This document shows, in pieces, positions 16,101-51,265 of a DNA stretch of 64,000 nt. The stretch lies in the NCBI RefSeq assembly GCF_964194025.1, contig NC_134469.1, forward strand, positions 76,012,001-76,076,000, in the 5' to 3' direction. The position numbers and the translations under genes are program-made. The notes beneath the pieces were generated by a model. The model worked only from the letters and a program-made list of their open reading frames with translations. It did not search any database and was not told where the DNA came from. How positions within the stretch are numbered: the stretch's first letter is position 1; each line of letters opens with the position of its first letter. This DNA comes from Convolutriloba macropyga. Taxonomy: Eukaryota.

Positions 16101-19100
16101 ACATAATTACTTGTCTTCGACTATGTTTTAGTAAAATAACTGATAAATAGCTCTCAAATAAAGTTTGTAGCAATTATATCAGTCCTGCTGGTATTTTGAT
16201 GCAATTATTCGCTTGACCCTTTTAACTTTTTGTCCTCCGAAACTAACTGTTCGCGAGTCGTTTGAGAGCAATTCTACTGACTTTAGTAGATAATGTTTAC
16301 ATGCTCTCAATTAACTTTGTGTTTTGATCTGAAATGAAGGTTATAGCAATCTTATTGGTGATGTCGGCCTGTTTAATTGCTATCAAACGAAGTTGGTAGC
16401 AATTTATGCGATTTTTGGTTGATCGATTTTGTTTACTGACCTTTTGGCTGTTCAAGTTCACGCTTTTGACTGCTCGACTTCTTGATGTTTGCCTGATCTA
16501 AACTGATCTCATTTGGAATTTAAAGTGCCAACTTAAATGGCAGCGTTTTTACTAAAATTGATCGAAAATGTGCCAAAATCGTCTTCAGTTTCCATTCAAA
16601 ATCTTCCTACATCAATTAAGAGCTCAAATAACATTTTTAAAATGCTGGAATAACATTTGAGACCTGGAATTAAATCTTTTGTGGCCCTTATTGAATTAAT
16701 TGCACCGCTACAATATAACCAAGCTCCATCTGTTGTTCCAGTGCAATTCGTCCGACTGCTGTCTGTTTGGTTTTTTCGATACAATATTGATGACTTGTCA
16801 TAGCTTCATAAACCTCATAGCAGTAGTCCGCTATTGAACAACTTGTAGCACAACTTCAGACACCTCATAGCTGAAATCGATTTATTGATCGGTACAAAGG
16901 GATAGATAAATTTGTTTTTTTTGGCTTCCTTTGGTTTTATAACTCAGAGGCGTTATGGCTACCTTCTGTTTTTAATCTGTGACTTTTGTGGCCAAATTTG
17001 TTGGGTGGGCACCTGAAAATTGAAGAACAGAAGAGGCGGGCCAGATTGTGTACTTTATTCATGCCTTCTGCGAGTGCTACAAACGAGCAAATTTTTCCTT
17101 CCAATGGGATAACTTCAAAGCAAATTTGTTTTTATAGCTGCGAAGCTGTAAGCTGAGCGTAGCTATATTGCGGTGCTCTCGGTTTTTTTTTTGTTTCGTC
17201 GTCTGACGCTTCATTTTCGTTTTACATTTGTTCTAGAACATTCTGTCTCGTCACTGCTTAAATGACTTTTTCGCGCTTGATTTCACGCTTTCTGCGTGAC
17301 CTAAATTGCCGTTATTCAGAAACAGAATCTGTTCCTAAAACAAAGTTGATTGTAAGAAAACAGATTGTGTGGTCCGACAGCCGAGTGGTTAAAGCGACTG
17401 GCTGTTAATCCGGAGATCGCCGGTTCGAGACGCGACAGGGAAACTTTTTTTGCACCCAAAAACAACCTCCTTTGAAATAAACTTGTAAGTTTTATAGGCG
17501 GCGGCGATAACTATTATCAACTCACTTCTGTATCTTTTTCGACCTGTATTTTACGGCACGCAAGTCTATTTCGCAGCTATTCCGGCAATCTGCCGGCTAT
17601 GTTTTTTAATAGCAGACGTCAGCCTCTCAAACGGCTATTAATTAGGCGCCTTCCTTTTCTTACAATTCAAAGAAATTGAATTGTATTGGGGTGCTGTCTT
17701 TTTTTAAGATCTGTTCACACGTTTTCATGATTTTTGAAGGCAAATTGGAGTAGTGATTTTGGTCACGCCGAAACAAGAAGTGGAGCGGAAAAGCGAGTGG
17801 TTTTGCGGCGTGGGTTTTTTCGCTCTAATATTAAAGTAGAGTGAGAAAACGGTGTTTGAACAAAAATTTGCTTTCTCGCTACTGGCTTTTTGTTCACATG
17901 CGGCAATTTCACTTATTTTACACTTATGATTCTACTCTGATTTTACACTTTGATTTTACTTTTTTTTCAATTTTTTGGATCGGATTTTTTAAATGACTTT
18001 CTCAATCCATTCATAGTTCATTCTAGTCCTAATTTTTTGTTTCAACTAAATTTCCATTTCTTGCTAGTGGTTTTTTTGTTCACATGAGGCATTTTGACAT
18101 TGTTTTTCTGTTTTTTTAATTTTTTTGATCTGATTTTAAGAGGGTTTTTCCAATTCGCTCATAGTCCGTTTTAGGTCTAGATGTTTGTTTAGTCAAAGAA
18201 AATTCTTTGAATTGTGCGTCAGGACTTGTCCTGCTATGTTTTTTTTTTAATTCGCTTTACCTTTTGTTCACATGAGGCATTTTGACATTGTTTTTCTGTT
18301 TTTTTTTAAATTTTTTTGATCTGATTTTAAGAGGGTTTTTCCAATTCACTCATAGTCCGTTTTAGGTCTAGATGTTTGTTTAGTCAAAGAAAATTCTTTG
18401 AATTGTGCGTCAGGACTTGTCCTGCTATGTTTTTTTAATCCGCTTTACCTTTTGATCACGTTTTTCGTTTGACTTCTGACTTACCTCAATCACTGTTTCA
18501 ACTGAATTGTTTTTAAATGCATTCACTCAATGAATTATGCAACATAGTGAATACAGTCAAGGTCAAAAGAGCAAAATCAAAAATCAAATGCGATAAAGTC
18601 AAGTCATTGAGTCAGTGAGTGAGGAATAGGTTATCAAAGTTCATTAGAGTGTTTGCTAGATGACACTGGTAATAAGCTTATTAGCTTTCAGTTTAGAAGC
18701 TGAGTTAAGTATAGTTTTAGAATCCAACTGAAACTGCAGGCCGAATTAGAACACTTCTTGACACTGAAAAAATAGAAATTGGGTCATTTTATCTCCTCTT
18801 TTTTCTTTCTCTGGTTCAATCCCGATGTGCATCAAGCGCGTCAACGGTGGCTATTTTCTGACAATCTGCCGGCTATGTTTTAAATTTGATTGCTCTCACA
18901 CAAAGTTTGTGGCAATTAATTTAAACGTGTTTGTTTTGTGCAAAAATGTTTTGCTTGAATGTTTTCTGGAACATTTTTTCATTTCACTTCCTGACTGACT
19001 TATTCACGCTTGACTTTCAAAGGTTTTTTGAGTGATTTGAATTGCTAGCATTTTGAAAATGTCTGCCAAAAGAAAACTGATTGTGAGAAATGACTGTAAA

Positions 19101-22100
19101 TATCCCGTGTAGCGTAGAGTTTAGTAACCCGACTCTCATGCACATTGAGTCCCACCCTGGTCCGAATTTTTCGCACCATAGAATTTTCTCTAACCTATTC
19201 CTACTTCTACATTGTTTGCCTCACCAGTTTGTCAGACGTTGGTCTGTTTACGTTTTCACTAAATGATAGCACTACGCAATATTTTTTAGTATTTAGTTCG
19301 GTCCGCTGTTCTCTTTTGACTATTGGTGCGTCGAAGTTTTGTCTAAGCAGTGCATTATTTCTACAATTCTCAAATTTAGCAGTGTGAAGTCAACTGTAAA
19401 TGTTCTTGAACACAGTTCTTAGCCATCTTTTCTGAGGACTATTTCGAGGCCACCAAGCTGTGGCATTATCTTTCAAGAGTTTTGCATCTTCTGGGATTTA
19501 AGATTTTTTTGGTGCATATTATTTGCTCCCCCAATCACACGTGCCATATATGCCATTTATAGGTTGTATATGGGTTATATAGGTTTCTTGTATGCACATT
19601 TATTGTCGTGGTCAATAACACGGGTCAAAGATTTCACTAAGTTGAATTTTAAATTAAATTTTGAACTGAAAATATGCAAAAATTAGCTTGTATTTATAGT
19701 AGTTATCTATTCGAAAATGTACAGAGAAAATTTAGATTAGCTAAAATTATTTTACATGATTGGCATATGAATAGATCTTAACTCCGAATCCCGGAGGTGA
19801 TTTTCTATTTTCATCAACATTTCATGAGAATCATATATGGCTTGGGTACAATCGAGTTCATTAGTTGGAGGTCGGTTGATGTTAGAATCAGGTTTCTGTT
19901 GGTGGGAGAATTAAATTCTGACATATGATTGATGGGTCAATAAGATAATGGTAGCACCAAAACAAAATTAGAATTGAGTTTAGTTTTGTGGCGATTACTT
20001 ATCGACACAGCAATAAAGTTCGTCAGGTAAATTCTTTTTTGGTTGAAACTTTAATAAAGAAAACGTCAAAGTTTCTTGATGTTTCTTTGAAACCATCACA
20101 TCCTCCCTCCCTTTTTGAGCAAGTTTGTGGGTATAGGTTCTCCAAATCTGTCGGGTTGTTTTCTGTTTCTTGTCGATGTTCGTGAAGGCTCTGAGGTTTT
20201 GGGTTGTTGGTGCTGTGCAGATGATATGGCTGCAGAAGCTTCATCTTGAAGTGAAGGTCCCACATCTGTGTTCTGAAGTTGTTGTTCTGATTGAGATATA
20301 GTCTCCTCCACTGCTGGTTCAGTTTTCACATTGTCCTGGTCTAGTCTCGCAATTTGGTTGTCGCCCACTAGAATAGTCCGTGCTGAGTTTTCGGGCTGTC
20401 TGAAAGATGTGTTGAAGCCCTTCCTGATGATGAAGGTAGCAGGAACTGTCTTTGTCTTTTCGTTGGCCTTGAATAGAATGGGTTCGCACAAGTCGAAATC
20501 TGCTATGGCTGGTAGTTTCACTCTGCGTCCCAACAAGAGTTCCACTGGAGTTTTGCCTCTCGTCTTTGAAGTGTTGCGATGTGTCATCAGTGCCCTTTGC
20601 AGGAATGCTCCAAATGACACATTAAGGTTGGGACTCCACGCTTGAAGTGCCCGCTTCACTGTCTGAACTGCTCTTTCAGCTAGTCCATTAGCTCTTGGAT
20701 GATAGACGGGTGATTCCATTTTCTTAATTGCCAGCGATTCAAGCCACTGTTTAAGGTCACCACTTACAAATTCAGGACCATTATCAGATACTAAAGTTTT
20801 TGGTATTTCAAATCTTGCAAAGATTTGACTAAGATATATTTTTTTCTGTTTCTGATGTCCTATTTCCCGCGGGGAAAGCTTCTATCCAACCAGAACCCGC
20901 ATAAACAATTGCGCATCGACATTGCCTTGGTCCTTAACATAACCCCAGTCTATGTGGAACCGTTCCCAAACGTCGGCTTCTGGCCACTTAGAGAGTGTTT
21001 TTCCCTGGCTAGGCCTGTTCAATTGACAATTCTTACATTTACTAGCAAAGTGTTGAACGTCTTGGGTAATGCCAGGCCACCATGCTATCATTCTGACTGA
21101 TGCCTCGGTTGCATTCTTCCCGGGATGTGTCTCATGTGCTTTTGACAAAACCAAGTGTCGTAATTTGGGTGGAAAGGAACACCTCTGAAGATGATTCCAT
21201 TATGTAAAGTAAGTCCATCTTTCTGTCTTTCGAATCCTTTTTCCGCTTCTGAACGTTGTTTCCAATTGCCGCTTTTGATTCGTTTCATTATGTCCTCGAA
21301 GAGTCTGTTTGTTCCAAGTTCAGTTTTTATTGCTGCTTTGGTCACCAAATCATTCTGGGCGAAGTAAATGTTATTGATTGCGAAGCACACTCGATCGTTT
21401 TCCGATTCGTCTTCGTCAAAATCCATTCTGCTCAAAGCATCTGCATGGGATATCTGCTCTGCTGGTGTGTACTTCAACTCATAGTCGAAACCCATTAGAG
21501 CTATTGCCCATCGTGATTCTCGCTGATGCTGTCTTGGGGATGATCTCCTCGTCTGTCTTGGGGATGATCTCCTCGTCTGGTGCAAAGAGATATTTGAGTG
21601 CTTTGTGGTCAGTCTGTAGGGTAAATCGTCTTCTAAGAGGGAATTGCTTAAGTCTTGTGACCACAAACACAATTGCCAGTGCTTCCCGCTCTATGTTCGA
21701 GTAGTTTTGCTCCGCTGGAGTCAATTTTCTCGATACATATATGACTGGATGTCCTTCTTGCGAAGGAACCCCGCCATTGGCTTTTTCAGAGGCGTCAGTA
21801 GTAACTGTTGCTGCTTTTTTTAGACTATATGGCTGTACTGGTGGGTTAGCACAATTCATTTTTTATGTCTTTAATGGCTTTTTGTTGCATTTTGCCCCAT
21901 CAGAAATCGCTATTTCTCATGTTATTTAAGGGTAGCATTTTTGTTGCAAAATCAGGTATCATTTTTCCGTAAAAATTAGCTAGCCCAACAAACGATTCGA
22001 GTTGTTTTTTGTTAGTTGGTGCTTTTGCGTTTTTTTTAAACATGTTTGGGATCTGGTGCTATTCCCTCCTTTGAAATGGAGTATCCCAAAAAGCTAACGC

Positions 22101-25100
22101 TATCGACTGGTTTTGAGTTAGATTTTTTCTCATTAATAGTAAAATTTATCTCACGTAGTCGACTCCTGACTGCAAGCATTCTCTTGTCGAACTGCTCCTT
22201 GGTAGTTCCATACACCAATATATCGTCTTGAAAGATCACAACACCTTTGATTCCTTTGAGTGTTGATTCGATGCAATTCTGTTAGATTGAAGAAGAGTTT
22301 TTCAATCCCTGAGGTAGTCGGCACATCTTGAACAGTCCCTGAGATGTGTTGATTGTGCATATATCTTTTGCTTCTTCGTCAAGTTCAATTTGATAGTAGA
22401 CTTCTGAGAGGGAGGTCAATTTTGCCAAAGTATGAAGCCCCATGTAGGTTGTGGAAGATCGTCTCCATGTCTGGTATTGGGTAGTCCTCATCCATGACCT
22501 TGCCATTGATGTGCACTTTCAAGTCCACGCAAAGTCTCAGTTCTCCACACTTCTTTCTCTGCCACACCACAGGAGATGCATTAGTGACTCCTCCTGGCTG
22601 TACTGGTTCAAGGATGCCTTGTCTGACCATTTGTTCCAGCTTCTCCGTGACCTTGTCTTGAAGAGGTAGAGGTATTTCTCTGACTTTGCAGAACATTGGT
22701 TGTGTTCCTGGTATCAGCTTCACGTGAGCTTTGTAACCCTTCTTAGCAGGCAGGTGCTCGGCTGTGATGTTGTTCACACCGTGCTTGGGTAGAAGGTCTC
22801 CACCAGGTAGTCCAAATTCTTTGTCAGACTGCACAATTGCTAGTTGCTTTTGAGTGAGCCTGCTTCCGTTCCACTCAACGTCACAATTAAGTGATCCCAG
22901 AAGCGTAAATTGATGACCATCATAAGCTTTTGAGATGTGTTATCTTACCATCTAACTGAGGTTTACCAAGCTCAGTCCATATTTTTTATGATATTACTGT
23001 GCTATCTGCACCTGTGTCTACCTGCATTTTTACTTTGCAGTTATTTATTGAGATATATTCCCATGTCATAGATATGCTAAAGATTTGTTCTTCTGTATAA
23101 AACATTCCCATCTCCGATGCTGGAGATGCTTGCTCTGAAGAAACATTTTCTTCGCAAAAGTTTTTCTGTTTATTGTACTTACCTGAATTTGGTTGGGGTT
23201 TGCTTCTAAACATTTTTGAGAAGCGTCCCACCTTTTCACAGGTGTTGCATTTTTTACTTTGCGCTGGACAGGGTCTACTAGAGTTTGGCTTACCTCCACG
23301 CCTAGTGCACATGTTGTTGCTTTTATTAGCCGTTATTTTTTCATTTGGTTTTCGAAAGGTCTTTTTCAAGTTGAACCCAACTTCTTCTTTCACAGTAAAG
23401 GGCTTATTACCTGATGAAGAACTTGCAAAAGCCATTGCTTGACTTCTGAACTGTAAGCTCTCGGTCATTTCAGTAACCGACATTGCTGGTTTTGCTTTTT
23501 TAACTTCTAGTAGTCTAAGTTTTACTTCAGGGTCCCTCAAACCTGAGATAAACTTTATTTTTACCAACTCCTCTTCGGGGTTGGCCGCTGTTTTCAGTTT
23601 TTCGACGCCACAATAGCGTGCTTCTTCTCTAAGACGTGCTAGGAAGTCGTCGTACTTCCGTACACCTTGTATTACGGACCGAATTTGAGCCCTTTCTACC
23701 GTTACTACTCTCTCTTTAGAGAACTATAATTTTGAATCGCAAATATGATGTCTTTATACGGAGTGTCTATCAAATTCCCAGGACTCATTAGGCTCCTAAG
23801 TTTAATAATTGCATTTTGCCCGCACATACTAAGAAAGAAATTGGTTAGCTGTAGGTCCTGTACAGTACCATCGGTGTTGACCTTGTCCTCTTTCTTCTCT
23901 GCGCGACATTTCGCCACAAAAGACATAATCCACGCAGTAGCTGATTCTGCATTCTGTAGATCCAAATTTTGTTTGTCTGTAGTTGGTCTGGATCACCATT
24001 GTCGTGGTCGATAACACGGGTCAAAGAATTCACTAAATTGAATTTTAAATTTTGAACTGAAAATATACAAAAATTAGCTTGTATTTATAGTTATCTATGC
24101 AAAAATATACAGAGAAAATTTAGATTAGCTAAAAATATATTACGTGATTGGCATGTGAATAGATCTTAACTCTGAATCCCGGAGGTGATTTTCTGTTTTC
24201 ATCAACATTTCATGAGAATCATATATGGCTTGGGTACAATCGAGTTCATTAGTTGGAGGTCGGTGGATGTTAGAATCAGGTTTCTGTTGGTGGGAGAATT
24301 TACTTCTGACATATGGTTGATGGGTCAATAAGATAATGGTAGCGCCAAAACAAAATTAGAATTGAGTTTAGTTTTGTGACCATTATTTATCGACACAGCA
24401 ATAAAGTTCGTCAGGCAGGTTCTTCTTTTGTTCTTTGAAACTTTAATAAAGAAAACTTCTAAGTTTCTTGATGTTTCTTTGAAACCATCACAGTTATACA
24501 ATTTTGGTTTTTCATTTTTGGACTTCAACTTTTTCTTTTTGAAATCCATATTAGTAGGTTATGGAAAGCAATTTGCATTTCTTTAAAATTTTTCATGAGT
24601 TTTCACTGATTCTCAAGTGTTGTATTTTAAATTGTGCAGCGCAGTCTACACCGCCATTAATTCATTTCGGAAATTTTAAATAATGTTTGTAGTAATTTCA
24701 CGGTTTCAATTCTCGACGTAAAAAGCGTAGTGTTAAGCGTAGCTATCAAATTGAAAAAAACTGCAAAGAAAATTAGAGTTGTTTCAGCACTTCTGCTAAC
24801 TCGCATTTTCTTTTTCCGTTCTTTTGTGATCTTCATACTCGGGCAAAGTACAAAGTAAATTGAATCAGGCTTTTGTCTACCCTAAAAAGAACAAGACATT
24901 TCATCTGGGTATAATATCAATAATGGACGGTCATATTTCGTCTTTTTTATACTGTTTTTCTTTTGCAGCAGTGAAGAAGATGAGGTGGGAACGTTTACAC
25001 ACGAGGAGATTCGGGAGCGGATTGAGAAGCGAAAGAAAGAATCTGAGGCGAACAGAGACGTAGGGAATCCTCGATGTGCCGTGGTCTGTGTGCTGGGACA

Positions 25101-28100
25101 TGTCGACACTGGTGGGTTCACTTATCACCTTAGCAACAAATTGATTAAAATTTGGCTCATTACATGAAGCGTTTTGAACAAAACAAGAGTTTAAGATCAC
25201 CGTAGTTTGGGTTAAATTTAACTCAAGAAGGGCGGGCGCGCGTACATAAAAGTTTAATACCCCGTACATTTTTCTTGATTTTTGACAAATTCAAAGCGCG
25301 TACTTTTGAACCTAATTTTGGGTTTGGGGATGCAGGGTGCATATAAGATAATATTGAGTCACGGGCTTCGCGGGAGATTCAAACAGATTTAAACGATAGT
25401 TTGAATTATCAGGAAAGACGAAGATCCTGGACAAAATTAGAAGGTTTAAACGATAGTTTGAATTATCAGGAAAGACGAAGATCCTGGACAAAATTAGAAG
25501 GACCAACGTGCAAGACGGTGAGGCTGGAGGGATCACGCAGCAGATTGGTGCCACTAACATGCCCCAGTTTGCGATCACTGAGTGGAGCAAGTCGGCTAAT
25601 GTCAAGGGATTTGACGAGAGCACCCTGAAGCTCCCGGGATTCCTAGTTATTGATACCCCAGGTGTGAATACGAACCTCCTATTTTGTTCTTGTCGGCTAA
25701 CAGAAAACACTATCAAATTAGATAGATTATCAAATAGATATAGGCTCCCTATTTCTTAAGAAGGCTTTTGAGCGATTTAGTTGATCATGTTCCTAAATTT
25801 AGTAGTTTTTTAGGAGTTTTAGTTTAGGATTTTGTTTTTTTTTGTTAATCAAACAATATTAAAATTTTTTCCTGATGTTCTTCTCTTTCTGCTAGCCACA
25901 TTTGTTTGCAGGTTTTTGTGAGCCCGAGTTTTTTTGCGGAAATTGAAAATGAAAGAGCACCTTTTGTAGTTTTCTCCAACTAACCATTTCATTCATGGTT
26001 TAGACGTCTTTTTCTTCAATTAATTTGTCCTTGTGAAGATAATCAACAGGTGCTCTTTGAAGGCTTTGTTTGAGCCATTGTTAACTCTGGTTATGATTCC
26101 GCATGGTTGAGTTTCACTGTGCTTTAAAAGTCTCCAGCAAAAATTTGACAATGGTCAGCGATGATCGTATGCTTAGCATTTTAATGCTGAATAGAAATGT
26201 TGAAAATCACTTTTTGTAACAACAGGCCACGAATCTTTCACAAACTTGAGAACAAGGGGATCTTCTCTGTGTGATCTGGCAATTTTGGTTGTCGATATCA
26301 TGCATGGACTGGAACCTCAGACCCTGGAATCGATTCAGCTTCTCAAGAATCGACAGGCGCCCTTCGTAATTGCGTTAAACAAAATTGATCGTCTGTTCGA
26401 GTGGAAATCGAACCCGAACCAGGACATCAGAGACACAATTAAGCGACAGAAGAAACATACAAAGGATGAGTTTGAAACGCGTTTGAAGCAGGTGATCGCT
26501 GAGTTTGCCGAAAAATGTGAACTGAATGTGGTCCCATTTTGGGAGAACGAGGATCCTGCAACCTACGTGTCAATTTGTCCAACTTCTGCGCATACAGGTA
26601 TGTTGAATATTGCTTGTTCGTACAACTGCGCATTTAATTCAAGGTTTTTTTTAGTTAACTATGACTTAGTCTTATCCCTCAACTATAGATCTGATAGATC
26701 ATCGGTTCAATTTAAAAATCTCAATTTTGAGGTGTCAGGTTTGTTGAAATCTCTGGTTTTTGATGAAGCTTCTAAAAGTTACTAAGAATGCATTTCCTTT
26801 ATAGAAATGCAACCAACGTTATATCTTTTTTTGCATTTTTCCGAGTTCGTTAACCCAGTACGTATAACCCCAGCTGTGACTCAAAAGATATTTTTAATCA
26901 GAAACGTTAAATTTTTCTTTCGATGGAGATATTTTTCATTTGAAAGAGATTTGATTATACAGAATGATAAGCTGGTACTCGACATGTACTATAATGTGCT
27001 CTATAGGTGATGGGATGGGCAACATGATCTGGTACATGGTGACATTCTGTCAGAGCTTCCTGAAGAAGCGATTGGCCTACAGAACTGAGCCACAGGCCAC
27101 AGTGCTTGAAGTCAAAGAAATCCAAGGACTGGGCACTACTATCGACGTCATCCTCGGTAAGATATTTTAAGATAAATTCAACTACGCTGTCATATAATCT
27201 TTAAACTGCAAGGAATCGATAGCTAAGGGGAATGGAACTTTTTCTAGTCTCTTTAGCTCGTGATTTGGCGTTTTGATAACGGCTTGTCTGCCTAATAAAG
27301 GTAAAATTAGTACTTATAGTAATTGACTGCTATAAAACAGCAAGACTAATAATTTTTCAAATAATATTTGCTTTCCATTGCGAGAAATTGAATATTTCCT
27401 ACACCGTTTCCATAATTTCAACAATTGACCAAATACCAATTGGCAGCTAAGACTACTTGATTTGAAATTTTTGTCTCTAAGATAGAAGGTTGTTTTAGTG
27501 AACGGACGCTTGAAAGAGGGTGTGCCAATTGTCGTCGCTGGCTACGAGGGTCCTATTCAGACTTATGTGAAGGCTTTGTTGGTGCCACCTGCAATGAAGG
27601 AGCTCCGTGTAAAAAATCAATATGATAAAGTCAAACAGGTAAGTGTATCTAACTTTCTAAATCAATGCTTCGCATGTGATTGAAAGAAATCTGTAAGATC
27701 AATAGACGTGAGACAATACTCAAAGTTATTATTTATCTGATTTTGTATTTTTTAAGACGCATCATCATATTATTGTCCTCTTATATGTTAGAGTATTTGA
27801 TCTTCACTCATTTTGGCTTCCATTATTAGGATTTAGGTGACTTCCTTTTATAACCCATCTCAATTTTCTGGCGTCTAGCGCGCCGACCACATATTTGCAA
27901 GCTCGATCTAATTAACATTATTTACCGACTTCTGTTTTCGAATATTGGGCTTTTGTAGTAATTCAGTTCCTAGTGTAAGCTAACGAGGAAGTGATGTTAA
28001 TAGCAGTCATTTAAGATTGGACCACTAAACGGTACTATTGAGCTCATTCCGCCAATCTGTCCCCCACCCGTTGGTAAGATTAGTCTAGCGTTTCTATTGT

Positions 28101-31100
28101 ATGACTCTTTGAGTCGTTTCCGTTACTCTACCTGCTGTTTTTTATGCAAAATTTTTGCCTGAACGATATGACTTTTCATGCGACTTTTACGCACTTGACT
28201 TTTTGAGTGATCTAAATTTCTCTATAATTCACAATTTTCACACTCAGTTGGCGGCAGTTTACTGCTAAAATTCAACAGAAAAGTCGCCGAAATTTGTGTC
28301 TTTTTTTACAATTTCAATTTTACGAAGTTTTAAAAGTTCACGAAATATATGGACTATTCTTTGCATAAAACATTGTCTCTTTCATACCATTCGCTAATTG
28401 TTTTGTCCAACAGAGTTCGGCTTTTTTAAAAACCGGAGGAGCCAACATTTTGAGCGATATCGATTTCTTAACGCAAAAATTTCATATTTATTAAAACCAA
28501 ATAATTAAAGAATTAAATTTGTTCCGAAATCTAATGATTTAAAAACAATGCTTCTGTTTGAGTAGATTTTCAATAATTTACAAACTGAATCATGTCTAAT
28601 TATTTAGAAATAGAGTTGTTTTGATTAAAATAATAGAATAATAAGAAATGAATAGGAAAACGATCTAATTGGTTTCACTCTAGTTTAAATAAGGAGGCTC
28701 GGTAATGTGCGTACGCACATGAGGTTCCGACCCCGCTCATCCACATTTCTGAGTTAATTGGCTACCAAATGATGAAGAGTTAGAAAACCTTCAACTACAT
28801 ACATATCGTTCAATAAACAACCAATGGTATACAATGGTTTCCCGCCTTTTCACCCCTACTCATTTAAACCCGATTTATTCACCCCTGTATCATTTAATCC
28901 CTCTATCTTTTAACCCCTCTATCCTTTCACCCCGTTTTTAATCTTTCTATAAGAAAGGATTATTAAATTAGCAATATAATCATTTGGCCATTCCTCGCGG
29001 GCCATGGCCATGCCTCAGCTGCCCGTGGGATTTGATATGAAACTATGAAAACCGAAGGGGACTAGTTTATTCACTTTGTTATGGCAGAACATGCTTTTAT
29101 GTCGACTGCTAATTGGCGGGATGAAATGATATAGGGGTGAAATGATAGAGGGGTTAACTGATAGAGGGGTGAACAAATCGGGGTTAAAAGATAGGAGGTT
29201 CAATGAATAGGGGTGAAACTATCAAAACCGATCGTGGGATTAATTTACTTAATTATGACAAAACGTGTTTTAATGTCGACTGCTAGTTGGCGGGATGAAA
29301 TGATAGAGGGTGAAATGATAGAGTGGTTAGATGATAGAGTGATGAACAAATCGGGGTTAAAAGATAGGCGGTTAAATGAATAGGGGTGAAAAAAGTAGAA
29401 GCGGATATAAAATTGCCAGCTTAGAGGGCCAATGAACGTTATTGATAATAGGATTAATAGAAACGAAAATAGTAAATATCAAACAACAAACACTATTTAC
29501 GACCAAAACTTGATGGCTATAATAAATAAAATCATAAAATCAAACTCGCATCAGATAAAAACTAAACAAAGCAATTTGATCTTTGATCTATACTTAATTT
29601 GAAACGATATGAGACCTGTTCTCAATGCGACTGGTTGGAAGGTCGACAAAAAGAGTAAAGAGGTGCGCAAGTCAAAAACACGTTTTCGTTTTTGAAAACA
29701 ATTAATTTTACCGTTATTTACGTCATTAGATATCAACTGAATTCCTAAAATGTTCATTTATATCCCAATAGCAAGCAATTGAGACATGTCATTATCCAAA
29801 TTTCATTTGCACAAACTTCAAAGCCAGTGGAACCTACGATCATTGTTATATATTAAAAAGGAAACAAAAGTCCTATAAATTGTACAAATATAAAAATTCT
29901 TAAATATTTTATGAAATCTTGTAGTTACAGTAGTAACAAAGCCGAGAAACAAATGTTTGAAACTAACACCGTTGTAGAGATCAAATTGTAGTTCACTGGA
30001 AACGGGTTGTGACCTGTGTTTACGGAGACTGAGCTACAAATTGACCGAAAAACTTTAAAAAAAATGACGAATTTCAAAAACAAAAATATGTTTTTGAAAA
30101 CAGTTTTTTAGGTCATAACAGACTTTAAAGTTCAACAAACAGCAATAGAATAAGTTGCAATACCTCAGGAAACCAATTGGGCCTGTTAATAATGAGACGA
30201 AGTCACGACCCCACAAAATGACTATAAATATATAAAGAAGCCAAAACTTTTACGAGATCCCACTATTCGAGGTTCTTTAATTATAAAATGACTTCTGCAA
30301 GACCTGTAAGTTGCACTTTTTTCTTCATTTTAGCATCAATGAGCCTTATTTTTAAAAGGACTACGAGGAGATGATAACAAAAGGAACCCAAAAATTTAAC
30401 GGTATAGAAATCTCGAAAGATTTTTGAGAAATTAGTGGTTGAAGCAATAGGTCATAATGTATAACCAAACGCAACAAAATGTATGAATCAACAAAAGTAA
30501 TGGTAAATGAAAAAAAGGTACATTTACAAAAATTTTTTTCAATATTTTAGTCATTGAAACAAACATATAAACTGAAATCTTCAACTGGGTTGAGTTATAC
30601 GTCTTGGGGAAGCAATTGAGACCTATTGCTATCAGGTATATGGCGTACAACATCGAAAAATGACATATATAGGGAAAAACAGAAAAAGTCTATTTAAATT
30701 CTGCGAGATAACTGTCTCAGCGCAACTATGTAACTAAAACAATAAACATATCCAGATACGCTTTTTTCTAACCCTGTGCATTTTCCCTACTATGCTTTCC
30801 TTCAATTGGACCTGTCAATAATATGATAATTTGACAAGTAAACAAAATGAACTAATAAAATATGCAATTATGCTCAAAATGAAAAAAAATTAGAAAACGC
30901 GTTGTAAAAAAGCATAGAACCATTACGAACAATTATTTATAACCCACAGTAAATCGGTTTTCGCTTGTTTTTACTGAGACTGCGCCCGAAATTAGAGAAA
31001 TAAGACGAAAATATTGGCAAAGTTAAAAAATTAACTGATATTTTCTAAAAACAATTATTTTCAAAGTCAAAACAGACATTAGATAACAACTGAAAGAATT

Positions 31101-34100
31101 GTCTAGATTCATTTATACCTCCGAAGAATTAACAGGATCTTTGACTGGGGACAATAAGTCATTTAACTACAAAAGGGATAACAAATGAAAGCAAAAATTC
31201 AAGATGTACATAAAAAAATTTTTACGAAAACAATTGGTCAGAGCCACAAAAACTATGAGCTTATTCTGAAACTATCAAGATCAGCCCAGATGTTACTGCG
31301 CGTCTAACAAATTACTAATTTTTTTCAAATTGTTGCAAAAAAGATGAATTTTCAAATTGTTGCAAAAAAGATGTAGCTCGTTTGTCAGCTTAAAAAGAAA
31401 ATGATTGCATTTTTAAGGTATCTACTTACAGCAAATTTAAAATAATTGGGCTAAGAAAGCAAATCTGATCCCGAAAAAAAAATGGAATTTTGAAAAATTT
31501 AGTAAAAATTCTAACAAAAAACTCAGACCTAAGAATTCTGCAACCCTTCCCTATCTTTAGAGATAAAATCAATAACACTACAGCAAAAAATTTGAACAAA
31601 TTTTTGCAAAATTGACGAAAATTAGGTCAAAAATACCAAAAATGTGAAAACATGAATTACGTCAATTATTCACAAAACTTTAAACATCGATAACTCCCTA
31701 TCAAAAGGGAAAATCGAAAAAATCTTTTTTATTCCAAATTCTACACTGTACGGGCTTTTTAATGATACCACTCACAACTTTCTACGATGATTATATCGAT
31801 CGGCCAAAATTGTCTGAACAAAAAATAACCCATTTGAGTATATAGTTCCTCCCCCACTAAAGTGGGTCGGAACAACAAACTCTGAAGACGTTGACCTTCA
31901 GTGTTTTGAAGCTTGGGGAAATTTACCCCAGTGAGATTGTAAGCGTGTCGTAAACTGTCAAAGCGCACAGGACCCAGAAAGTAACTGAAAACGAATATTC
32001 CCATTTTGTAAAACACAAAGTCAAATGAAAATTTAATTACTGTTTCTTTTTAAAATTGGGAGTGCTTGAACCAAAATTTCTTGCCTATATTTTTGACTGA
32101 ATCAAACAAGGTTTGAATAAAATTCCCAGACAATGCAAAAACTGAAATAGAAAATTTATTTTCTTTGAATGATTCTCTTTCGCTTGTTTAAAAAGTCTTC
32201 GCCAGCAACACATGCATAATTTATTAAATCAATAGTGCAAACCATTTTGGTTTTCATTTTTTCATTTTGGAGATTGGATGTGTCAATTGTTTGGGAGATT
32301 AAAAGCGATAAGGCACTTTAAAGATTGGAACTAATATCTGTCAAAAAAGTAACATTTGGAACGTTATAAAATTTCATTGACAATTATTATTTAATCGGAA
32401 CTAATGAATTTTTTTCCGTTTCTTCTGTTGGCGATCATCTATTGTAAAATGCATCATGTTGATTTTAAAAAAAAATTATCCAAAAAAGTATTTCGGAAAA
32501 CAAATGAATCAGTTAACAACCTTGAGGGGGCGTATTGATACCTTCTGTGCTGTGCACACTTGAAGGATTCCGGGTTGGTTCTTAACTTGGAAACAAAATT
32601 TGTAGCAGTTATATCAGTCTTGCGCTCTATTTTTATGCGGTTTTTGCTCGGCCGATTTTTTGTCTGACCTTTTGACTTTTTGTCCTCTAAAATGGGATAA
32701 CCAGGTAACGCCCAGAGGGCATTAAGTTCTTTATACCGTATGCGATCCACTGATTCCGTTTTCGAGACATAAAATCATTGCGTGAAGGAAGGTTCCTAAC
32801 CATGTTCTCTCCTCTTCCCTACTTCACCTTCCGTTGCCCAGCGCTCTGTAACCCCTTATGAGTCCGCACACCCACGCACTTCCTCTCTGCCCCCCCCCCC
32901 CACCGCGCTCATCTCATGCCCCTTTAATTAAGCTAAAACTAGCATCCCTAAACCGTAGCTAGCTACTGAAGCCAACGGCTCGCTAGTTGTTTGAGAGCAA
33001 TTCGCCCGACGTTAGTTGGTTATGTTTAATAGCCGCCCTCATCTTCTTAGCAGGCTTTCATTGCGCTGCTATTGATTTTGTTTACTTCGTCGGATAAAAA
33101 TTTATTTTGCTTTACCTCATTTTGCCGCTCTTCCGACATTTTCCGGGAAAGCGTTTTGACTTATCAAGACTAGTTGCTCAGCAAAGCAATCTAAATGAGT
33201 GGCGTCATGAAAACAAAATCAAGAATAGAAATGGGATAAAAACGTAAAGCCCATTTTTAGTTGCCTGATAGTTCAACTTTGCTCTTCTAAGTCTTAGTTA
33301 CCATCTCCTATGCGTATTGGTTTTGATAGTAGCATTTGTATCCTCTCAACAAGAAGCAGGAGTATATCTAACAGTGGAATGAAATCAAAATTGTTCGCAC
33401 TTAAAAATTTTGTTGGACAAAAATGATTGATGTACTAGCAAAATTTTTTAAGTGCAAACAATTTTGATTTCATTCCACTGTTAGACATACCTCTGCTTCT
33501 TGAGAGGATACAAAGGATAGTATCAAAACCAATAAGCATACGAGATGGTAAGTAAGACTTATAAGAGCAAAGTTAAACTATTTCTTCTGTTCTGTCAATC
33601 CTAATCGGGTTTATGGGAAGCAGTAGCGGATATTTCCCGGCAATCGGCTGGTTATGATAACCCAATTTTAAATTATTATAAAACTCTGTTTAGTTGTTGT
33701 CGCCTGTTTATTTTGGATTGATTGATTCCAAACCATCAATTTTTGGTTGTTGCGGTAAAACGACAGATGTTCCTTTTCCATAAATATTTTTAAAACACAA
33801 GGAGTCCCATTTTCCTCTTTCAAAACAAAAGTTTCCAAACTGAACACATGTATCGTCTTTTTACGGGGTTGAGGATTGGATGACTTCAGGGAAATTTTGG
33901 TTATAGGTGCGAGCTGCGACTGGTGTGAAAATCCTGGCTAAAGACGTGGAGAAGGCGTTGGCTGGAATGCCGATGCTGGTTGCAGCCAGAACTGACGAGC
34001 AAGAGTTACTTACGGAGGAAATGGAGAAGATACTAGCCAGTATGATTTCGTCAATCAAACTCAATGACAGAGGCGTATACGTGCAGGCATCTACGCTTGG

Positions 34101-37100
34101 TATGGCTTTCTTTTTAAATTTCACCTCAAACAAAAAGCAATATTTGAGGCTCTTTGTTCACCTGTAAACGGTTAACTTGTAAATTAGATGAAAGGTGGAA
34201 TCTTTTCTGTTTCGCCCCAATGTTTTTCATGTGACCGAATTACAAAATGAAATGTTATATAGCACGTTACTATGTTAAAAAAAATTAGCACGTGCGGGCG
34301 TAAAAGATAATATGCCCATTAAGCTGGGCGGGAGGCTGATACAGAATAGATCCGAAAGGTGCTCTTGATTGATAACAGTGCTATCATGATTTTTCGCCGT
34401 GCTAGTTTTTCATCGTATATCCGCCAGCCCCACCATTTTCAGCTCCTAAAAACAAAAACAAAATCCGCTGAGTTGGTTTTATGTATTCTAGAGAAAGCTG
34501 TTTCCACGTGGCTTTTGAATCTAAAGGAAATGATTTTAGGTTCACTGGAGGCTTTGCTGGAGTTCTTGAAGCAGTCACAAATTCCGTACTCTGGCATAAA
34601 CATTGGCCCAGTTCATAAGAAGGATGTCATGAAGGCTACTACAATGCTGGAGCATAACGAGTTATACGGTGTCATTCTGGGTAATGACTCTTGCAGTACC
34701 TCTTGAAATAGACGACTATTTTTTAGGGAATGATATTCTATTTTCATTTCTGCTCTCTTGACGCACCTACATTCCATGGATTTTTAATACTTTCTAAAAA
34801 CTTATTCCGAGAAGTATTGATTTAGTTTATCAAGCTAAGTAGCTCCAAGTTTGTGCCCTATTGAAATATATTTGTTATCTTATTCATATCTTTTCGTACA
34901 TAGTTTTATTTGTTCAGCTTTCGATGTAAAAGTGGAACGAGACGCACAGGAAATGGCAAACACATCCGGCATCAGAATATTTACAGCCGACATCATTTAC
35001 CACCTGTTCGATAAGTTCCAGGCCTACAAAGATGAGCTCAAACAGAAGGCCAAAGACAAACACAGACATCTGGCTATTTTCCCATGCAAGCTTCGAGTGT
35101 TGCCCAACTGCATATTCAACACTCGAGACCCAATCATTATTGGAGTCACCGTTGAAGCAGGAATTGTCAAAGCAGGAACTCAAATTTGCGTGCCCTCCAA
35201 GTAAGCGGTACAGTTAATTGCTCCTAAAGTTTGAAGCAATGGTTGTCTGTCTCTTTTTTGGAGCAACAAATTTTTCCTAGAATGTTATATCCCTAACTTG
35301 AGCAATTTGAATTTTCGATTGATTTTCATGCTTGAAGTCCAGATTTTTGCGTGATCAAATTCGCTCCCATTTAGGATTTAAGCCGGTATCATAATTTGCG
35401 GCAGTTAACTTTTTAACCTTTTATCAATAGACGCACAGCGAAAGCTGAGGCTCGGGCTATTATTGTCTCTTGTTTTTTACAATTCAAAGAATTTGAATTG
35501 TATTGAGCGCTGTCTTTTTTGAGATCTGTTCACACATTTTCATGATTTTGAAGTCAAATTGGAGTAGTGATTTTGGTCACGCCGAAACAGGAAGTGGAGC
35601 GAAAAAGCGAGTGGTTTTGCGGCGTGAAATTTTTTCGCTCTAAATTTAAAGTGGAGTGAGAAAACGGTGTTTGAACAGAAATTCGCTTTCTCGATAGTGG
35701 TTTTTTGTTCACATGCGGCAATTTCAGTATGATTTTTACTGTTTTTTCGATTTCTTGAATTGGATTTCTTTCTAAATGGTTTTCCCAATCCATTCATAGT
35801 TCGTTCTAGGCCTAGCTTTTTGTATAGTCAATGAAAATTCTTTGAATTGTACGTCAGGAGTTGTCGTGCTGTTTTTTTATTTCGTCGTCAAGAGTTTTAT
35901 TACGACCATATGACGTCACAACCACTTCAAATCTTCTTATTGTTCATTCGTTCATGCAATTTCAACTGATTTGCGTGTGCGACTTCATTTTTCACTCTTA
36001 GTGGAGCGAGTTTTTTTTTGTTCATTTGAGTGAACAAGTTTTTGGTCACACGTGACATCCGTCACGATGACTACCTGACTCTAAAATTGGCTTCTCTCTA
36101 CTGTAAATCAAAGAGATAGGGTTAAATGAGTGCGTGTCACTCTAAATGAAGGGTATTTGAGGGCACCTATTAGAAGTAGCATTAAGTTAAACGAATTCTT
36201 AATTATGAAAAAGGTTAAAGGGTTTTTTTTGGGTCTGTATCTTTTATTTTATATTTGAGACTGCATGTCTACGAAGCTATTGCGGCTATGTTCTGGCTAT
36301 CTGCCAGCTATGTTTTTCTGTTTCAATCCCGATGTGCGTCTAGTGCATCAACGGGGGCTATTTTCTGGCAATCTGCCGGCTATGTTTTACTGTTTTTTTA
36401 GACTGCAGATCTACGACGCTATTGTGACTATTCTCTAGCAATGTGCCAGCTATTTTTAAAACTGCGCAAAAATTGGTTCAGTTTTCGCTCTATATCTTAG
36501 TAGTGGTCTGTAATAAGCTAGATTAACATTTTAAGGCAGGCAACTACCTCCCCCTGCGGAAGTAAGGTAAAATTGAAACTTGCCGCCACCAGTCGTTCGA
36601 CAGCTATTCATCCGACTTTAGTCAGTTTGTTTAAACTTCCTGAATGAATTGTAGAGAACATTGTGAAGTCTATATTGAAAATTTTTTGGTTTCATTAGAT
36701 ATCCTTGAAGCCAAAAGAACTACTGCGCAAAAATTGGTTCAGTTTTCGCTCTATATCTTAGTAGTGGTCTGTAATAAGCTAGATTAACATTTTAAGCCAG
36801 GCAACTACCTCCCCCTGCGGAAGTAAGGTAAAATTGAATCTTGCCGCCACCAGTTGTTCGACAGCTATTCATCCGACTTTAGTCAGTTTGTTCAAACTTC
36901 CTGAATGAATTGTAGAGAACATTGTGAAGTCTATATTGAAAATTTTTTGGTTTCATTAGATATCCTTGAAGCCAAAAGAACTACTCGATTATTATTCGGG
37001 GATGTCAAACCACGTTTCACTCTGCTTAGGTGAAGTCAAAACTTCTCTGTAAATATCTGGGAAGCGATAGCGGAGCTAAGCCATATATTGGAGCTGCCCC

Positions 37101-48800: not shown

Positions 48801-51265
48801 ACTCGCTTACATGCAGTAGTTTTTCTGGCGCTAGGCTATCTAAATTGTTTGTTTTTGTTTGGGAGGGGGGATACCCGATTAATTCTGGCCAGATTTTACA
48901 ATGTTTTCATGGCTAACCTGTGAACACCTCCAACTGACTGACCTCAACTCCCAGGTTTTCTAAGAACTGGTTTTCTAAGTGCCCCTGAACAAACCAACAG
49001 GCTATGGAAATAATCGTAAATGAGGTATTCGATTAGTTGTTTAATGGTGATACCTTACGAGTATGTTGAAAGAGGACTGGGCGAAATGTTCTTGACCTAC
49101 TGAGGAAGAAGTTCAAATTGATGACGATGCCAGCCATGTCGATGCAGAATTCCCTATCTCCATTCCATCCTGTCTTCCATCCGATTACTTTTCCCTCTTC
49201 CGATACTAACGGACCCTATTTCCAGGATTTTGACTTGTTAATTTTCTCAGAGAATGCTTAAGTGCAATAATATATGCGCGATCCTTTCTTTAAAAGAAAT
49301 TGCCCGTGTTTACGCTTTGTGAAGTCTGCTTCAGTGATTCTTTCACTTAAATTTATTTCGCTTTGTGAACTTTTGGTCGTTAAACATAAAAATCCAGAAT
49401 TTTTTTTGTGGTTGCTAGATACATTCGATGAACCGAAATCATCGCAATTGGGACCATGAAAACTATGATCTTGGATATGGTTTGTCCGAAACCACAGAAA
49501 TTTCTGCTAATATTGCAGTTTCATCTCAGCGCATAGCATTTAAATTAAATTTGCAGTTTGCTGTGATAGTTTATTTCGTAGGCCATGAAAATGGCCGCAT
49601 TTTGCGATTTACTCCCTTAAATTTTTACTATTAGGATTGTCAAAATCCTGCCTCAAACGGAAGCCCGGCGATCAGCCCCACGTTGAACACTCCGACTGTT
49701 TTCACCCATCGTATCTGATTGAGGAATGCGGCATCGTAAGTGTTGTCGTCGTCTGCAAAGTAGAGAGCTCCATTAGTATCTAATTTGAGCTTGACAATTT
49801 CTACCAGGGCGCGGTTCCGCTGTGCGACTCCACGGTCCACTTCCCTCCTCTCTGAATCTTCATTAATGTAAATTAATCTAAGCACAAGTTGAAGCAAAAA
49901 ATTGTAAGAATTCAAGTTGTTATCTGCTGTGAGTTCTTGAGCTTTTTTCTTTCACATGGAGTTTTCTTTCACGACACAAATAGATGAGTTAGAAAATTTT
50001 GAAAAATTGTGCAGACTTACAGCTAGAATGCGACATGCCTGTCCTAGGAAATATTTGATGGGTTTTTACAAAAGTAAGTTCAAAGCAAGACTTGAACATG
50101 GTCTCCTTATACATGGATCTGTCAGTAAAAACATTGGAATCCTTGATTAAGACTCAAACTTAGGAATCAGACTTATTTTTCAAAAAGTTTCGGGACTCCG
50201 TTAATGATCTTTTAACTTTAATATATGCTTAATGTATTAGCTCTATTTAAGACAACTTCTCGTTTTTGCATTGAAAGCTGCAAACAATTTTCATTGTAGT
50301 AGTTCCTAAACGATCTTGAACACTAGGAACCAAAACACATTATCAAACAAGAAGACAAATATGAAACTCATATATAAACGAAGAAATGCATAGGAGAAAT
50401 GCAAAACGAAGAAAATGCAGTTTTTGTTACAAAATAGAGCAAACAGAATGCTTAATTATATAGTTACTAATGAACTGATACCACCAGATTACAGGTCCTA
50501 CAATTAAATGCAAATCAGAGATTTTTGTAGGAAAGGAACTAAATGGGTAATTATGCAAAATGAGTCTTTATTGGTTTGCATTTTTCTTTGAAGAAACTTG
50601 AAGGGGTGCTGTCGTATTGTCCGCTGCATGATTTTGTAAACTTTATATGCGAAACTTAATTCCGTGAAGAAAAGCACTGAAGAAATTATTATTTTCGAGA
50701 TCTAAAGTTTTTTTAAAGCATTCTCAACGCAGGATGTTACTGCGTTGTCTAAATTGGTCTCCCGCTGCATGATGGCTCGCAGAACTTAGCTCTGCCTGGC
50801 AGCAATGACAGCCGCATATGCATTAATATCTTCAAGAATTTAGTAACTATTTCTAGTACCCTGCGGCTATGTAATGTTGAAATTTGGTTATTATTTTTTG
50901 AACCGCTCAATAGCTAAACTGTTTGGGTTGTGCAGACACATTTATAAAAACCTTGGAAAGTCTTCTATATATCTGTGGACTAGTGGATTGGTCCTATTGG
51001 CATCCTCAACCACAATCCATGCACATTTGGGCACCAATTTTAACGTCTGTTTCAGTCGCACTAAGTCTGCAATTTGTGTCTTCCTGCTGTAAGTGGGGGT
51101 GATAACATACAAAGTAGGCATCGAAATTTTCGAATTGTGATTCTGAATCTGATCTCGCACTTCGTTTGCAACTGAATTCTCAAAATAAGTCAATAAATTG
51201 TAGCACAATAGCAACGAAAGTAAAGCTGTTAGGAAGTACGAGGGCCTGAACCTGAAGAATCTCAT
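45873..51265 (-). CDS. B3GAT3: Galactosylgalactosylxylosylprotein 3-beta-glucuronosyltransferase (GT43, B3GAT/GlcAT-I-like), 5 exons, 311 aa
   Basis: Exons (minus) 51265-50952, 49877-49652, 49215-49054, 48984-48918, 46039-45873 (936 nt, phases consistent). N-terminal signal anchor; LYVITPTYSR, WIVVED, RGVAQRNRAL, YFADDDNTYD (DxD), GLPFEGP, IDMAG, GHLENQFL, VHVWHTQT. The family call is solid; the paralogue (B3GAT1/2/3) is uncertain. Confidence 0.9.
46661..48744 (+). mobile_element. Composite family A element inside B3GAT intron 4 (antisense to host), with a T-rich module and a nested MITE
   Basis: TATAGCCGC 5' end; GCGGCTATTTTCCGGCAATCTGCCGGCTATGTTT 3' end at 48713-48746. Confidence 0.68.
48380..48539. 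mobile_element. Same MITE family, nested in a family A element
   Basis: TIR GGATCTTCTCTGTTTGTGCCCCC / GGGGGCACAAACGGAAAAGATCC; TSD TAATTTTG/TAGTTTTG; empty site visible in the paralogous element near 10590. Confidence 0.85.

What the first reader, a model, noticed from the sequence alone, without database searches (positions are those of the whole stretch)
25388..25501. Duplicated splice acceptor in the eIF5B P-loop exon: poison isoform or intron being born
Seen: an exact 57-bp duplication copies the acceptor plus the [11 protein letters not shown] codons. Three outcomes are possible. (1) The distal AG (25468-9) gives normal protein. (2) The proximal AG (25411-2) read through hits in-frame TAG at 25454-6, an NMD target. 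(3) The proximal AG plus removal of 25444-25500, which starts GT (AAG|GTTTAA, created by the junction) and ends AG, restores the wild-type frame exactly as a new 57-nt intron. GTT-type donors are used elsewhere in this window and a 69-nt intron exists in B3GAT. Known: tandem duplication is a proposed but rarely observed intron-gain route. Caveat: it may be an assembly artefact or a rare allele.
Basis: partly seen in the sequence, partly recalled or inferred. Interest (0 to 1): 0.7.

Follow-up and report, generated by a model that had tools for sequence, protein, structure and literature searches.

The report
Heterozygous splice-acceptor duplication in eIF5B
One of this worm's two chromosome copies carries a fresh 57-letter doubling of a splice signal in an essential protein-synthesis gene; it looks like an ordinary, possibly harmful variant covered by the intact copy, not a new intron or a control device.

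Summary
Window 25388-25444 and 25445-25501 are an exact 57-bp tandem duplication. It covers the last 25 nt of an intron and the first 32 nt of the eIF5B P-loop exon.

New here: the public assembly ERZ25071359 holds two collinear contigs for this locus.
- The 48x contig is 100% identical to the window over 20.5 kb and has the duplication.
- The 57x contig differs by 2.0% in substitutions and has one copy.
- Their G-domain exons differ by 15 synonymous and 2 non-synonymous changes, so both look like working alleles.

Three related species also lack the duplication: two have the intron with one acceptor, one has no intron. At least two other tandem-duplication indels separate the two contigs within 20 kb, so this mutation type is routine in this genome.

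An unused AG at -13 places the branch point inside the duplicated 25 nt. The allele therefore has two complete, identical acceptor modules. The distal one gives normal mRNA. The proximal one gives a stop 14 codons into the exon, a likely decay target.

The proposed 57-nt intron has a poor donor (GTTTAA) and no pyrimidine tract, so it is unlikely.

No reads or RNA could be examined.

The parts
24969..25111 (+). eIF5B exon encoding ...[13 protein letters not shown] plus the first base of the P-loop Gly codon. Its acceptor is a tandem gCAGCAG (AG at 24967-68 and 24970-71).
   Evidence: Sequence and frame. Conserved in relatives L001 and L003.
25112..25412 (+). Phase-1 intron as defined by the proximal acceptor (301 nt). 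It runs to 25469 (358 nt) if the distal acceptor is used.
   Evidence: Donor CTG|gtgggt. An intron at the same codon position is present in L001 and L004 and absent in L003.
25388..25444 (+). Copy 1 of the 57-bp unit: 25 nt of intron (branch-point region, weak pyrimidine tract, AG) plus 32 nt of exon.
   Evidence: TRF 100% identity. The sister contig has only one copy.
25445..25501 (+). Copy 2 of the 57-bp unit. Its AG at 25468-69 restores the normal exon.
25388..25394 (+). TTTAAAC, the inferred branch-point region of copy 1. The same motif in copy 2 is at 25445-25451.
   Evidence: Inference. An unused AG lies 13 nt upstream of the acceptor, so the branch point should lie about -15 to -25. Four other eIF5B acceptors show the same layout.
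25411..25412 (+). Proximal acceptor AG.
25454..25456 (+). In-frame TAG met if the proximal acceptor is used, 14 codons into the exon.
   Evidence: Direct reading.
25468..25469 (+). Distal acceptor AG, which gives the normal mRNA.
25470..25661 (+). P-loop/G-domain exon (G)[31 protein letters not shown]...VIDTP(G).
   Evidence: Match to eIF5B structures. Donor CAG|gtgtga.
25444..25500 (+). Judged unlikely to be spliced.
   Evidence: donor +3 is T against 8 of 8 GTR donors in this gene, and there is no pyrimidine tract.

Best explanation
This is a young 57-bp tandem duplication carried on one of the two chromosome copies of the sequenced animal. An earlier scan note calls the animal an acoel worm. 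The other copy keeps the ancestral single acceptor.

The unit contains the whole 3' splice-site module of the intron that splits the GHVDTG|KT P-loop codon of eIF5B: inferred branch point, weak pyrimidine tract, AG and 32 nt of purine-rich exon. The variant allele therefore offers the spliceosome two identical acceptors 57 nt apart.
- Splicing to the distal one removes copy 1 with the intron and gives normal eIF5B mRNA.
- Splicing to the proximal one leaves 57 extra nt with a TAG, producing a transcript expected to be destroyed by nonsense-mediated decay.

I expect a mixture, with the proximal site taking a substantial share. That would make this a neutral-to-hypomorphic allele sheltered by the intact haplotype. 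It is neither an evolved regulatory isoform nor a nascent intron.

Shown: the duplication, its absence from the sister contig and from three relatives, and the intactness of the rest of the gene. Inferred: that the two contigs are alleles of one individual, where the branch point lies, and which acceptor is used.
For: - Exact duplication.
- The same sample assembly ERZ25071359 holds ctg34209_48x, 100% identical to window 16300-36785 including the duplication.
- It also holds ctg31310_57x with a single copy.
- The two contigs are collinear over 20 kb and share the intronic LTR element. They differ by 2.0% substitutions over 18,820 aligned bases and by 59 indels. Their coverage is similar (48x and 57x).
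- The protein collection holds only these two contigs for this gene.
- Conserved exons differ by 15 synonymous and 2 non-synonymous changes over 433 codons, with no stops.
- Relatives L001 and L004 have the intron with one acceptor; L003 has no intron.
- Other tandem-duplication indels separate the two contigs (189 bp at 18241, 24/27 bp at 21539), and further two-copy tandem repeats lie in the window.
- The AG at -13 places the branch point inside the unit.
- In a human BRCA1 case, a tandem duplication across an intron-exon boundary was retained in cDNA with a premature stop (PMC11839443).
Against: - Neither the read support for the duplication nor the use of either acceptor has been observed.
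- The 48x contig may derive from the same reads as the window's assembly, so it is at most a second assembler's opinion, not an independent sample.
- The two contigs could in principle be a very recent segmental duplication rather than alleles.
- The branch point is inferred from AG positions, not mapped, and TTTAAAC is only a partial match to yUnAy.
Confidence: 0.75

Rival explanations
1. Assembly artefact: the haplotype really has one copy, and the second 57 bp was created during assembly or polishing.
For: The copies are perfectly identical. No reads were seen. The only other record with the duplication may come from the same reads.
Against: - The 48x contig matches the window base for base over 20.5 kb. 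If so, two assemblers agree.
- Tandem-duplication indels of 12-189 bp are a normal class of difference between the two contigs.
- I know of no reason why 48x of long accurate reads would yield a false exact 57-bp duplication. This rests on my own knowledge.
Confidence: 0.1
2. Null allele: the proximal acceptor is used almost exclusively, so the allele is a recessive loss-of-function (probably lethal) variant of an essential gene, kept alive only in heterozygotes.
For: - The proximal module is identical to the distal one and closer to the donor.
- Copy 1's purine-rich exon part (GAAAGACGAAGA) lies just upstream of the distal site. In that position, enhancer-bound SR proteins usually favour the upstream site and repress the downstream one (general splicing knowledge, not tested here).
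- In the BRCA1 boundary duplication, the duplicated intron piece stayed in the cDNA.
- A wild-type haplotype is present.
- An earlier scan note reports a heterozygous stop on one haplotype elsewhere in this genome.
Against: The distal module is complete and identical, so some normal mRNA is expected. There are no RNA data. This is an extreme version of the best explanation rather than a separate mechanism.
Confidence: 0.1
3. Nascent intron: after use of the proximal acceptor, 25444-25500 (GT...AG, 57 nt) is removed as a new intron, restoring the frame. This would be intron gain by tandem duplication caught while still polymorphic.
For: The GT and AG are in the right register. This lineage gains and loses introns: the P-loop intron is absent in L003 and a 6.27-kb intron is absent in L001 and L004. 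Tandem duplication is an accepted route to intron gain (PMC3443670, PMC2891723).
Against: - The donor GTTTAA has T at +3, against 8 of 8 GTR donors in this gene.
- The acceptor has no pyrimidine tract and four AGs in its last 32 nt.
- The good branch/AG module inside the 57-mer is only 4-25 nt from the donor.
- The product is identical to that of the far simpler distal-acceptor route.
Confidence: 0.03
4. Evolved autoregulatory poison isoform: alternative acceptor use coupled to decay tunes eIF5B levels.
For: A stop-bearing alternative 3' splice product is possible.
Against: The duplication is absent from the sister haplotype and from three relatives. The copies are identical, so it is very young. 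Nothing is conserved.
Confidence: 0.02

Closest known systems
[quoted passage not shown] 2011, PMC3265369; Drosophila cases in Lehmann et al. 2010, PMC2891723; review PMC3443670)
   Same: A short tandem duplication inside a gene yields a GT...AG interval exactly one unit long, and removing it would restore the reading frame. Unspliced forms carry a premature stop, so decay could act as a backstop.
   Different: The unit here is not purely exonic: it copies an existing acceptor. The AGGT is made at the junction and its intronic side is GTTTAA. A much better outcome, the distal old acceptor, gives the same mRNA without any new intron. No new intron position would result.
Disease-type tandem duplications across an intron-exon boundary (for example the BRCA1 intron 9/exon 10 partial duplication, PMC11839443)
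   Same: The duplicated acceptor plus exon start gives a transcript that keeps the duplicated intron piece and meets a premature stop. The variant is carried heterozygously.
   Different: That case is 2 kb and in human. Here the unit is 57 bp, a multiple of three, and contains the inferred branch point, so the downstream copy can fully rescue the mRNA.
Tandem alternative acceptors (NAGNAG and longer-spaced alternative 3' splice sites coupled to nonsense-mediated decay)
   Same: Two competing AGs serve one donor, and one product is non-productive. (From my own knowledge of the field.)
   Different: Those are usually conserved or arise by point mutation. Here both sites are identical full modules made by one recent duplication, and they are polymorphic. 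A real NAGNAG acceptor does sit one exon upstream, at 24966-24971.

Membership tests
Intron gain by tandem genomic duplication | Tandem duplication of an exonic segment that carries an AGGT proto-splice site | tested here: not met
   The unit spans the intron-exon boundary (25 nt intron plus 32 nt exon). AGGT exists only at the junction of the two copies, 25442-25445.
Intron gain by tandem genomic duplication | A GT...AG interval one unit long whose removal restores the frame | tested here: met
   25444-25500 is 57 nt, starts with GT and ends with AG.
Intron gain by tandem genomic duplication | Donor, branch point and pyrimidine tract adequate for the host's spliceosome | tested here: not met
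   The donor is GTTTAA against 8 of 8 GTR donors in this gene. The acceptor aaaattagaag has no pyrimidine tract and competing AGs. This rests on sequence only.
Intron gain by tandem genomic duplication | The new intron is seen to be spliced in RNA | not testable with these tools
Heterozygous small tandem-duplication variant | Present on one haplotype and absent on the other in the same sample | tested here: met
   ERZ25071359 ctg34209_48x has two copies and ctg31310_57x has one. They are collinear over 20 kb at 2.0% divergence. That they are alleles is inferred.
Heterozygous small tandem-duplication variant | Single copy is the ancestral state | tested here: met
   L001 and L004 have one acceptor; L003 has no intron.
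Heterozygous small tandem-duplication variant | Raw reads support both forms | not testable with these tools
Regulated alternative 3' splice site coupled to decay (poison isoform) | The alternative site gives a premature stop well upstream of later exon junctions | tested here: met
   TAG at 25454-56, with at least seven exons downstream.
Regulated alternative 3' splice site coupled to decay (poison isoform) | The arrangement is conserved | tested here: not met
   Absent from the sister contig and from three relatives.
eIF5B (the gene itself) | G-domain sequence with GHVDxGKT P-loop matching solved eIF5B structures | tested here: met
   The exon 25472-25660 matches human eIF5B at E = 2.7e-19. 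Pfam GTP_EFTU is recorded on neighbouring exon products.

The most novel reading that the evidence does not exclude
The duplication allele is common and tolerated in the population, and part of its mRNA is made by excising the 57-nt GT...AG unit as a separate intron. That would be a tandem-duplication intron gain caught while still segregating, in a lineage that visibly gains and loses introns.
Probability: 0.03. Interest if true: 0.7.

Novelty: new member of a known kind. Interest (0 to 1): 0.25.

Why it matters
As it stands, this is an ordinary heterozygous structural variant that happens to hit a splice acceptor of an essential gene. It matters in two modest ways.

First, it warns annotators that the reference haplotype of this genome carries a potentially disabling lesion in eIF5B. 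A gene model should use the distal acceptor at 25469/25470.

Second, it is a natural cis-competition test: two identical complete acceptor modules 57 nt apart, with phasing SNPs about 110-135 nt upstream in the preceding exon. Ordinary RNA-seq of a heterozygote could therefore show how this animal's spliceosome chooses between them and how much transcript is lost to decay.

Tried and rejected
- A search with the antisense ORF that spans the duplication found no same-species protein, only a relative (L001).
- Nine of ten exact look-ups of window ORFs were not in the collection. The tenth led to the 48x contig.
- Extending that contig to 20.5 kb gave 100% identity to the window. It therefore could not show whether the contig is an independent assembly.
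- Literature searches for direct experiments on duplicated acceptors gave little. Gao & Lynch 2009 is not held.
Full-length transcript-derived eIF5B proteins of this species were therefore out of reach of the length-limited word search.
- The large representative search was not used, because the protein's identity was not in doubt.
- I rejected a conserved regulatory reading because there is no conservation.
- I considered that the orphan distal acceptor might receive the spliced leader that earlier notes report for this genome. I set this aside as untestable here.

Full report
**1. The observation**

Window 25388-25501 is an exact two-copy tandem repeat of 57 bp: Tandem Repeats Finder gives 100% matches and score 228, and the repeat finder gives the same pair.

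Reading the sequence gives the following layout.
- The upstream exon ends ...GGA CAT GTC GAC ACT G at 25111.
- The intron starts with GT at 25112-13.
- Each repeat unit is the last 25 nt of that intron (TTTAAACGATAGTTTGAATTATCAG) followed by the first 32 nt of the next exon (GAAAGACGAAGATCCTGGACAAAATTAGAAGG).
- The proximal AG is at 25411-12 and the distal AG at 25468-69.
- From the proximal AG the frame runs into TAG at 25454-56.
- 25444-25500 is a GT...AG interval of 57 nt.

The exon translates to [31 protein letters not shown]... and matches solved eIF5B structures (human, E = 2.7e-19). The only correction is that the upstream exon ends at 25111.

**2. The gene and its state**

eIF5B lies on the + strand from about 13.8 kb to beyond 35.2 kb. 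An LTR retroelement sits antisense in a large intron at 20-24 kb.

I fixed the exon borders of the conserved part by frame, splice signals and conservation in relatives: 24969-25111, 25470-25661, 26226-26597, 27007-27156, 27499-27638, 33907-34099, 34540-34680 and 34918-35200. All are open in the window.

**3. Independent records of the locus**

I went through the protein collection instead.

The 83-residue ORF that starts in the P-loop exon exists on one public contig, ENA ERZ25071359 ctg31310_57x_l, 75 kb. That contig has a single copy of the acceptor and exon start.

An exact look-up of ten window ORFs found one further record, ctg34209_48x_l of the same assembly, 127 kb. It is 100% identical to window 16300-36785 and includes the duplication.

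The two contigs compare as follows.
- They are collinear over 20 kb and share the intronic retroelement.
- They differ by 2.0% substitutions over 18,820 aligned bases and by 59 indels.
- They also differ by transposon presence/absence.
- Their coverage is similar (48x and 57x), and the collection holds no third contig for this gene.

The simplest reading is two haplotypes of one diploid sample, so the animal is heterozygous for the duplication. This is an inference.

Across 433 conserved codons the two contigs differ by 15 synonymous and only 2 non-synonymous changes, and neither has a stop. Both have therefore been evolving as functional alleles, and the duplication is the only lesion seen.

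**4. Is the duplication an artefact?**

I cannot see reads. The ERZ contigs carry metaMDBG-style names. If so, two assemblers give the same sequence. Because the two are identical over 20.5 kb, I could not prove they are separate assemblies.

Tandem-duplication indels are a regular class of difference between the two contigs: 189 bp at 18241, 24/27 bp at 21539 and 12 bp in the sister contig. The window also holds other two-copy tandem repeats, at 31322 (exact) and 36461 (98%). I put the artefact reading at about 10%.

**5. Relatives**

Three more distant relatives were reached, with exon identity of 75-82%.
- L001 has the intron at the same codon position with one acceptor, ctgtatttttcag|GAAAGACG.
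- L004 has it with gctgtgtgtag|GCAAAACG.
- L003 has no intron there...GGTCACGTCGACACTGGGAAAACAAAA... is contiguous.

The single copy is therefore ancestral, and nothing about the duplicated arrangement is conserved.

**6. How it should behave**

The acceptor has an unused AG whose G lies 13 nt upstream of the acceptor G (gatAG, 25398-99). Four of the eight other eIF5B acceptors examined have an unused AG 10-17 nt upstream of the real one.

By the usual rule, the spliceosome takes the first AG far enough downstream of the branch point and skips AGs within roughly 10 nt of it. This is established splicing knowledge, not tested here. Under that rule the branch point must lie about 15-25 nt upstream of the acceptor, in or next to TTTAAAC (25388-94). 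That is inside the duplicated 25 nt.

Copy 2 therefore carries its own branch region, weak pyrimidine tract and AG, and the allele has two complete, identical 3' modules.
- Branching in copy 2 leads to the distal AG and normal mRNA. The old intron simply grows from 301 to 358 nt.
- Branching in copy 1 leads to the proximal AG, 57 extra nt and the TAG. At least seven exon junctions lie downstream, which makes this a standard decay substrate.

Which site wins cannot be read from the sequence. Proximity to the donor and the purine-rich exon start of copy 1, which sits just upstream of the distal site, would favour the proximal site. This comes from general knowledge of position-dependent enhancer effects. 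In a human BRCA1 duplication across an intron-exon boundary, the duplicated intron piece was retained in cDNA with a premature stop (PMC11839443). I expect a mixture with a substantial non-productive share. The allele would then be neutral to hypomorphic and sheltered by the intact haplotype.

**7. The new-intron route**

All eight eIF5B donors examined are GTG or GTA. The candidate donor is AAG|GTTTAA. The candidate acceptor, aaaattagaag|G, has no pyrimidine tract and four AGs in its last 32 nt. The only good branch/AG module inside the 57-mer is 4-25 nt from the donor.

The accepted tandem-duplication model of intron gain duplicates an exonic AGGT (PMC3443670; PMC2891723). This duplication copies a pre-existing acceptor instead, and the distal-acceptor route gives the same mRNA with no new intron. 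I give the new-intron route about 3%.

The lineage does show intron turnover: the P-loop intron is absent in L003, and a 6.27-kb intron is absent in L001 and L004.

**8. Comparison with earlier notes, and verdict**

No earlier scan note touches this place. Other notes report transposon-derived intron gains and a spliced leader. I used these as context only.

Verdict: the feature is real in the assembly and is an ordinary kind of mutation, a new example of a splice-acceptor duplication variant. It is of modest interest as an annotation warning and as a natural splice-site competition test.

Noticed in passing
window 27639-33906: A 6.27-kb intron splits ...YDKVKQ|VRAATG... here and in the sister contig. 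The coding sequence is contiguous at this point in relative L001 (read directly) and in L004 (adjoining BLAST hits). This is a lineage-specific intron gain, or a loss in both relatives. The intron holds inverted-repeat and 173-bp tandem-repeat sequence at 28.9-29.4 kb and 33.27-33.58 kb.
   Followed up: partly
L003:3190-3260 versus window 25111/25470: Relative L003 has no intron in the P-loop codon ([16 protein letters not shown] is contiguous), while the window, L001 and L004 do. This intron position is itself variable in the group.
   Followed up: partly
window 24966-24971: The acceptor of the preceding eIF5B exon is a tandem gCAGCAG (NAGNAG type), which could add or drop one codon. Relative L001 has ttAGCAG at the same place.
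   Followed up: no
window 25870; 17133-17602; 18241: Transposon and repeat presence/absence between the two contigs of ERZ25071359. A roughly 1.07-kb repeat-family insertion is present only in the sister contig (L006 10365-11440), with copies at window 17.6, 35.5, 40.1 and 62.7 kb. A 469-bp segment and a 189-bp tandem unit are present only in the window.
   Followed up: partly
window 21529-21579: An exact 24-bp x 2.1 tandem duplication inside the pol ORF of the intronic LTR retroelement ([17 protein letters not shown]). It is absent from the sister contig, so it is another young tandem duplication.
   Followed up: partly
window about 49000-49900, minus strand: A B3GAT-like glucuronyltransferase gene (FADDDNTY motif).
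   Followed up: partly
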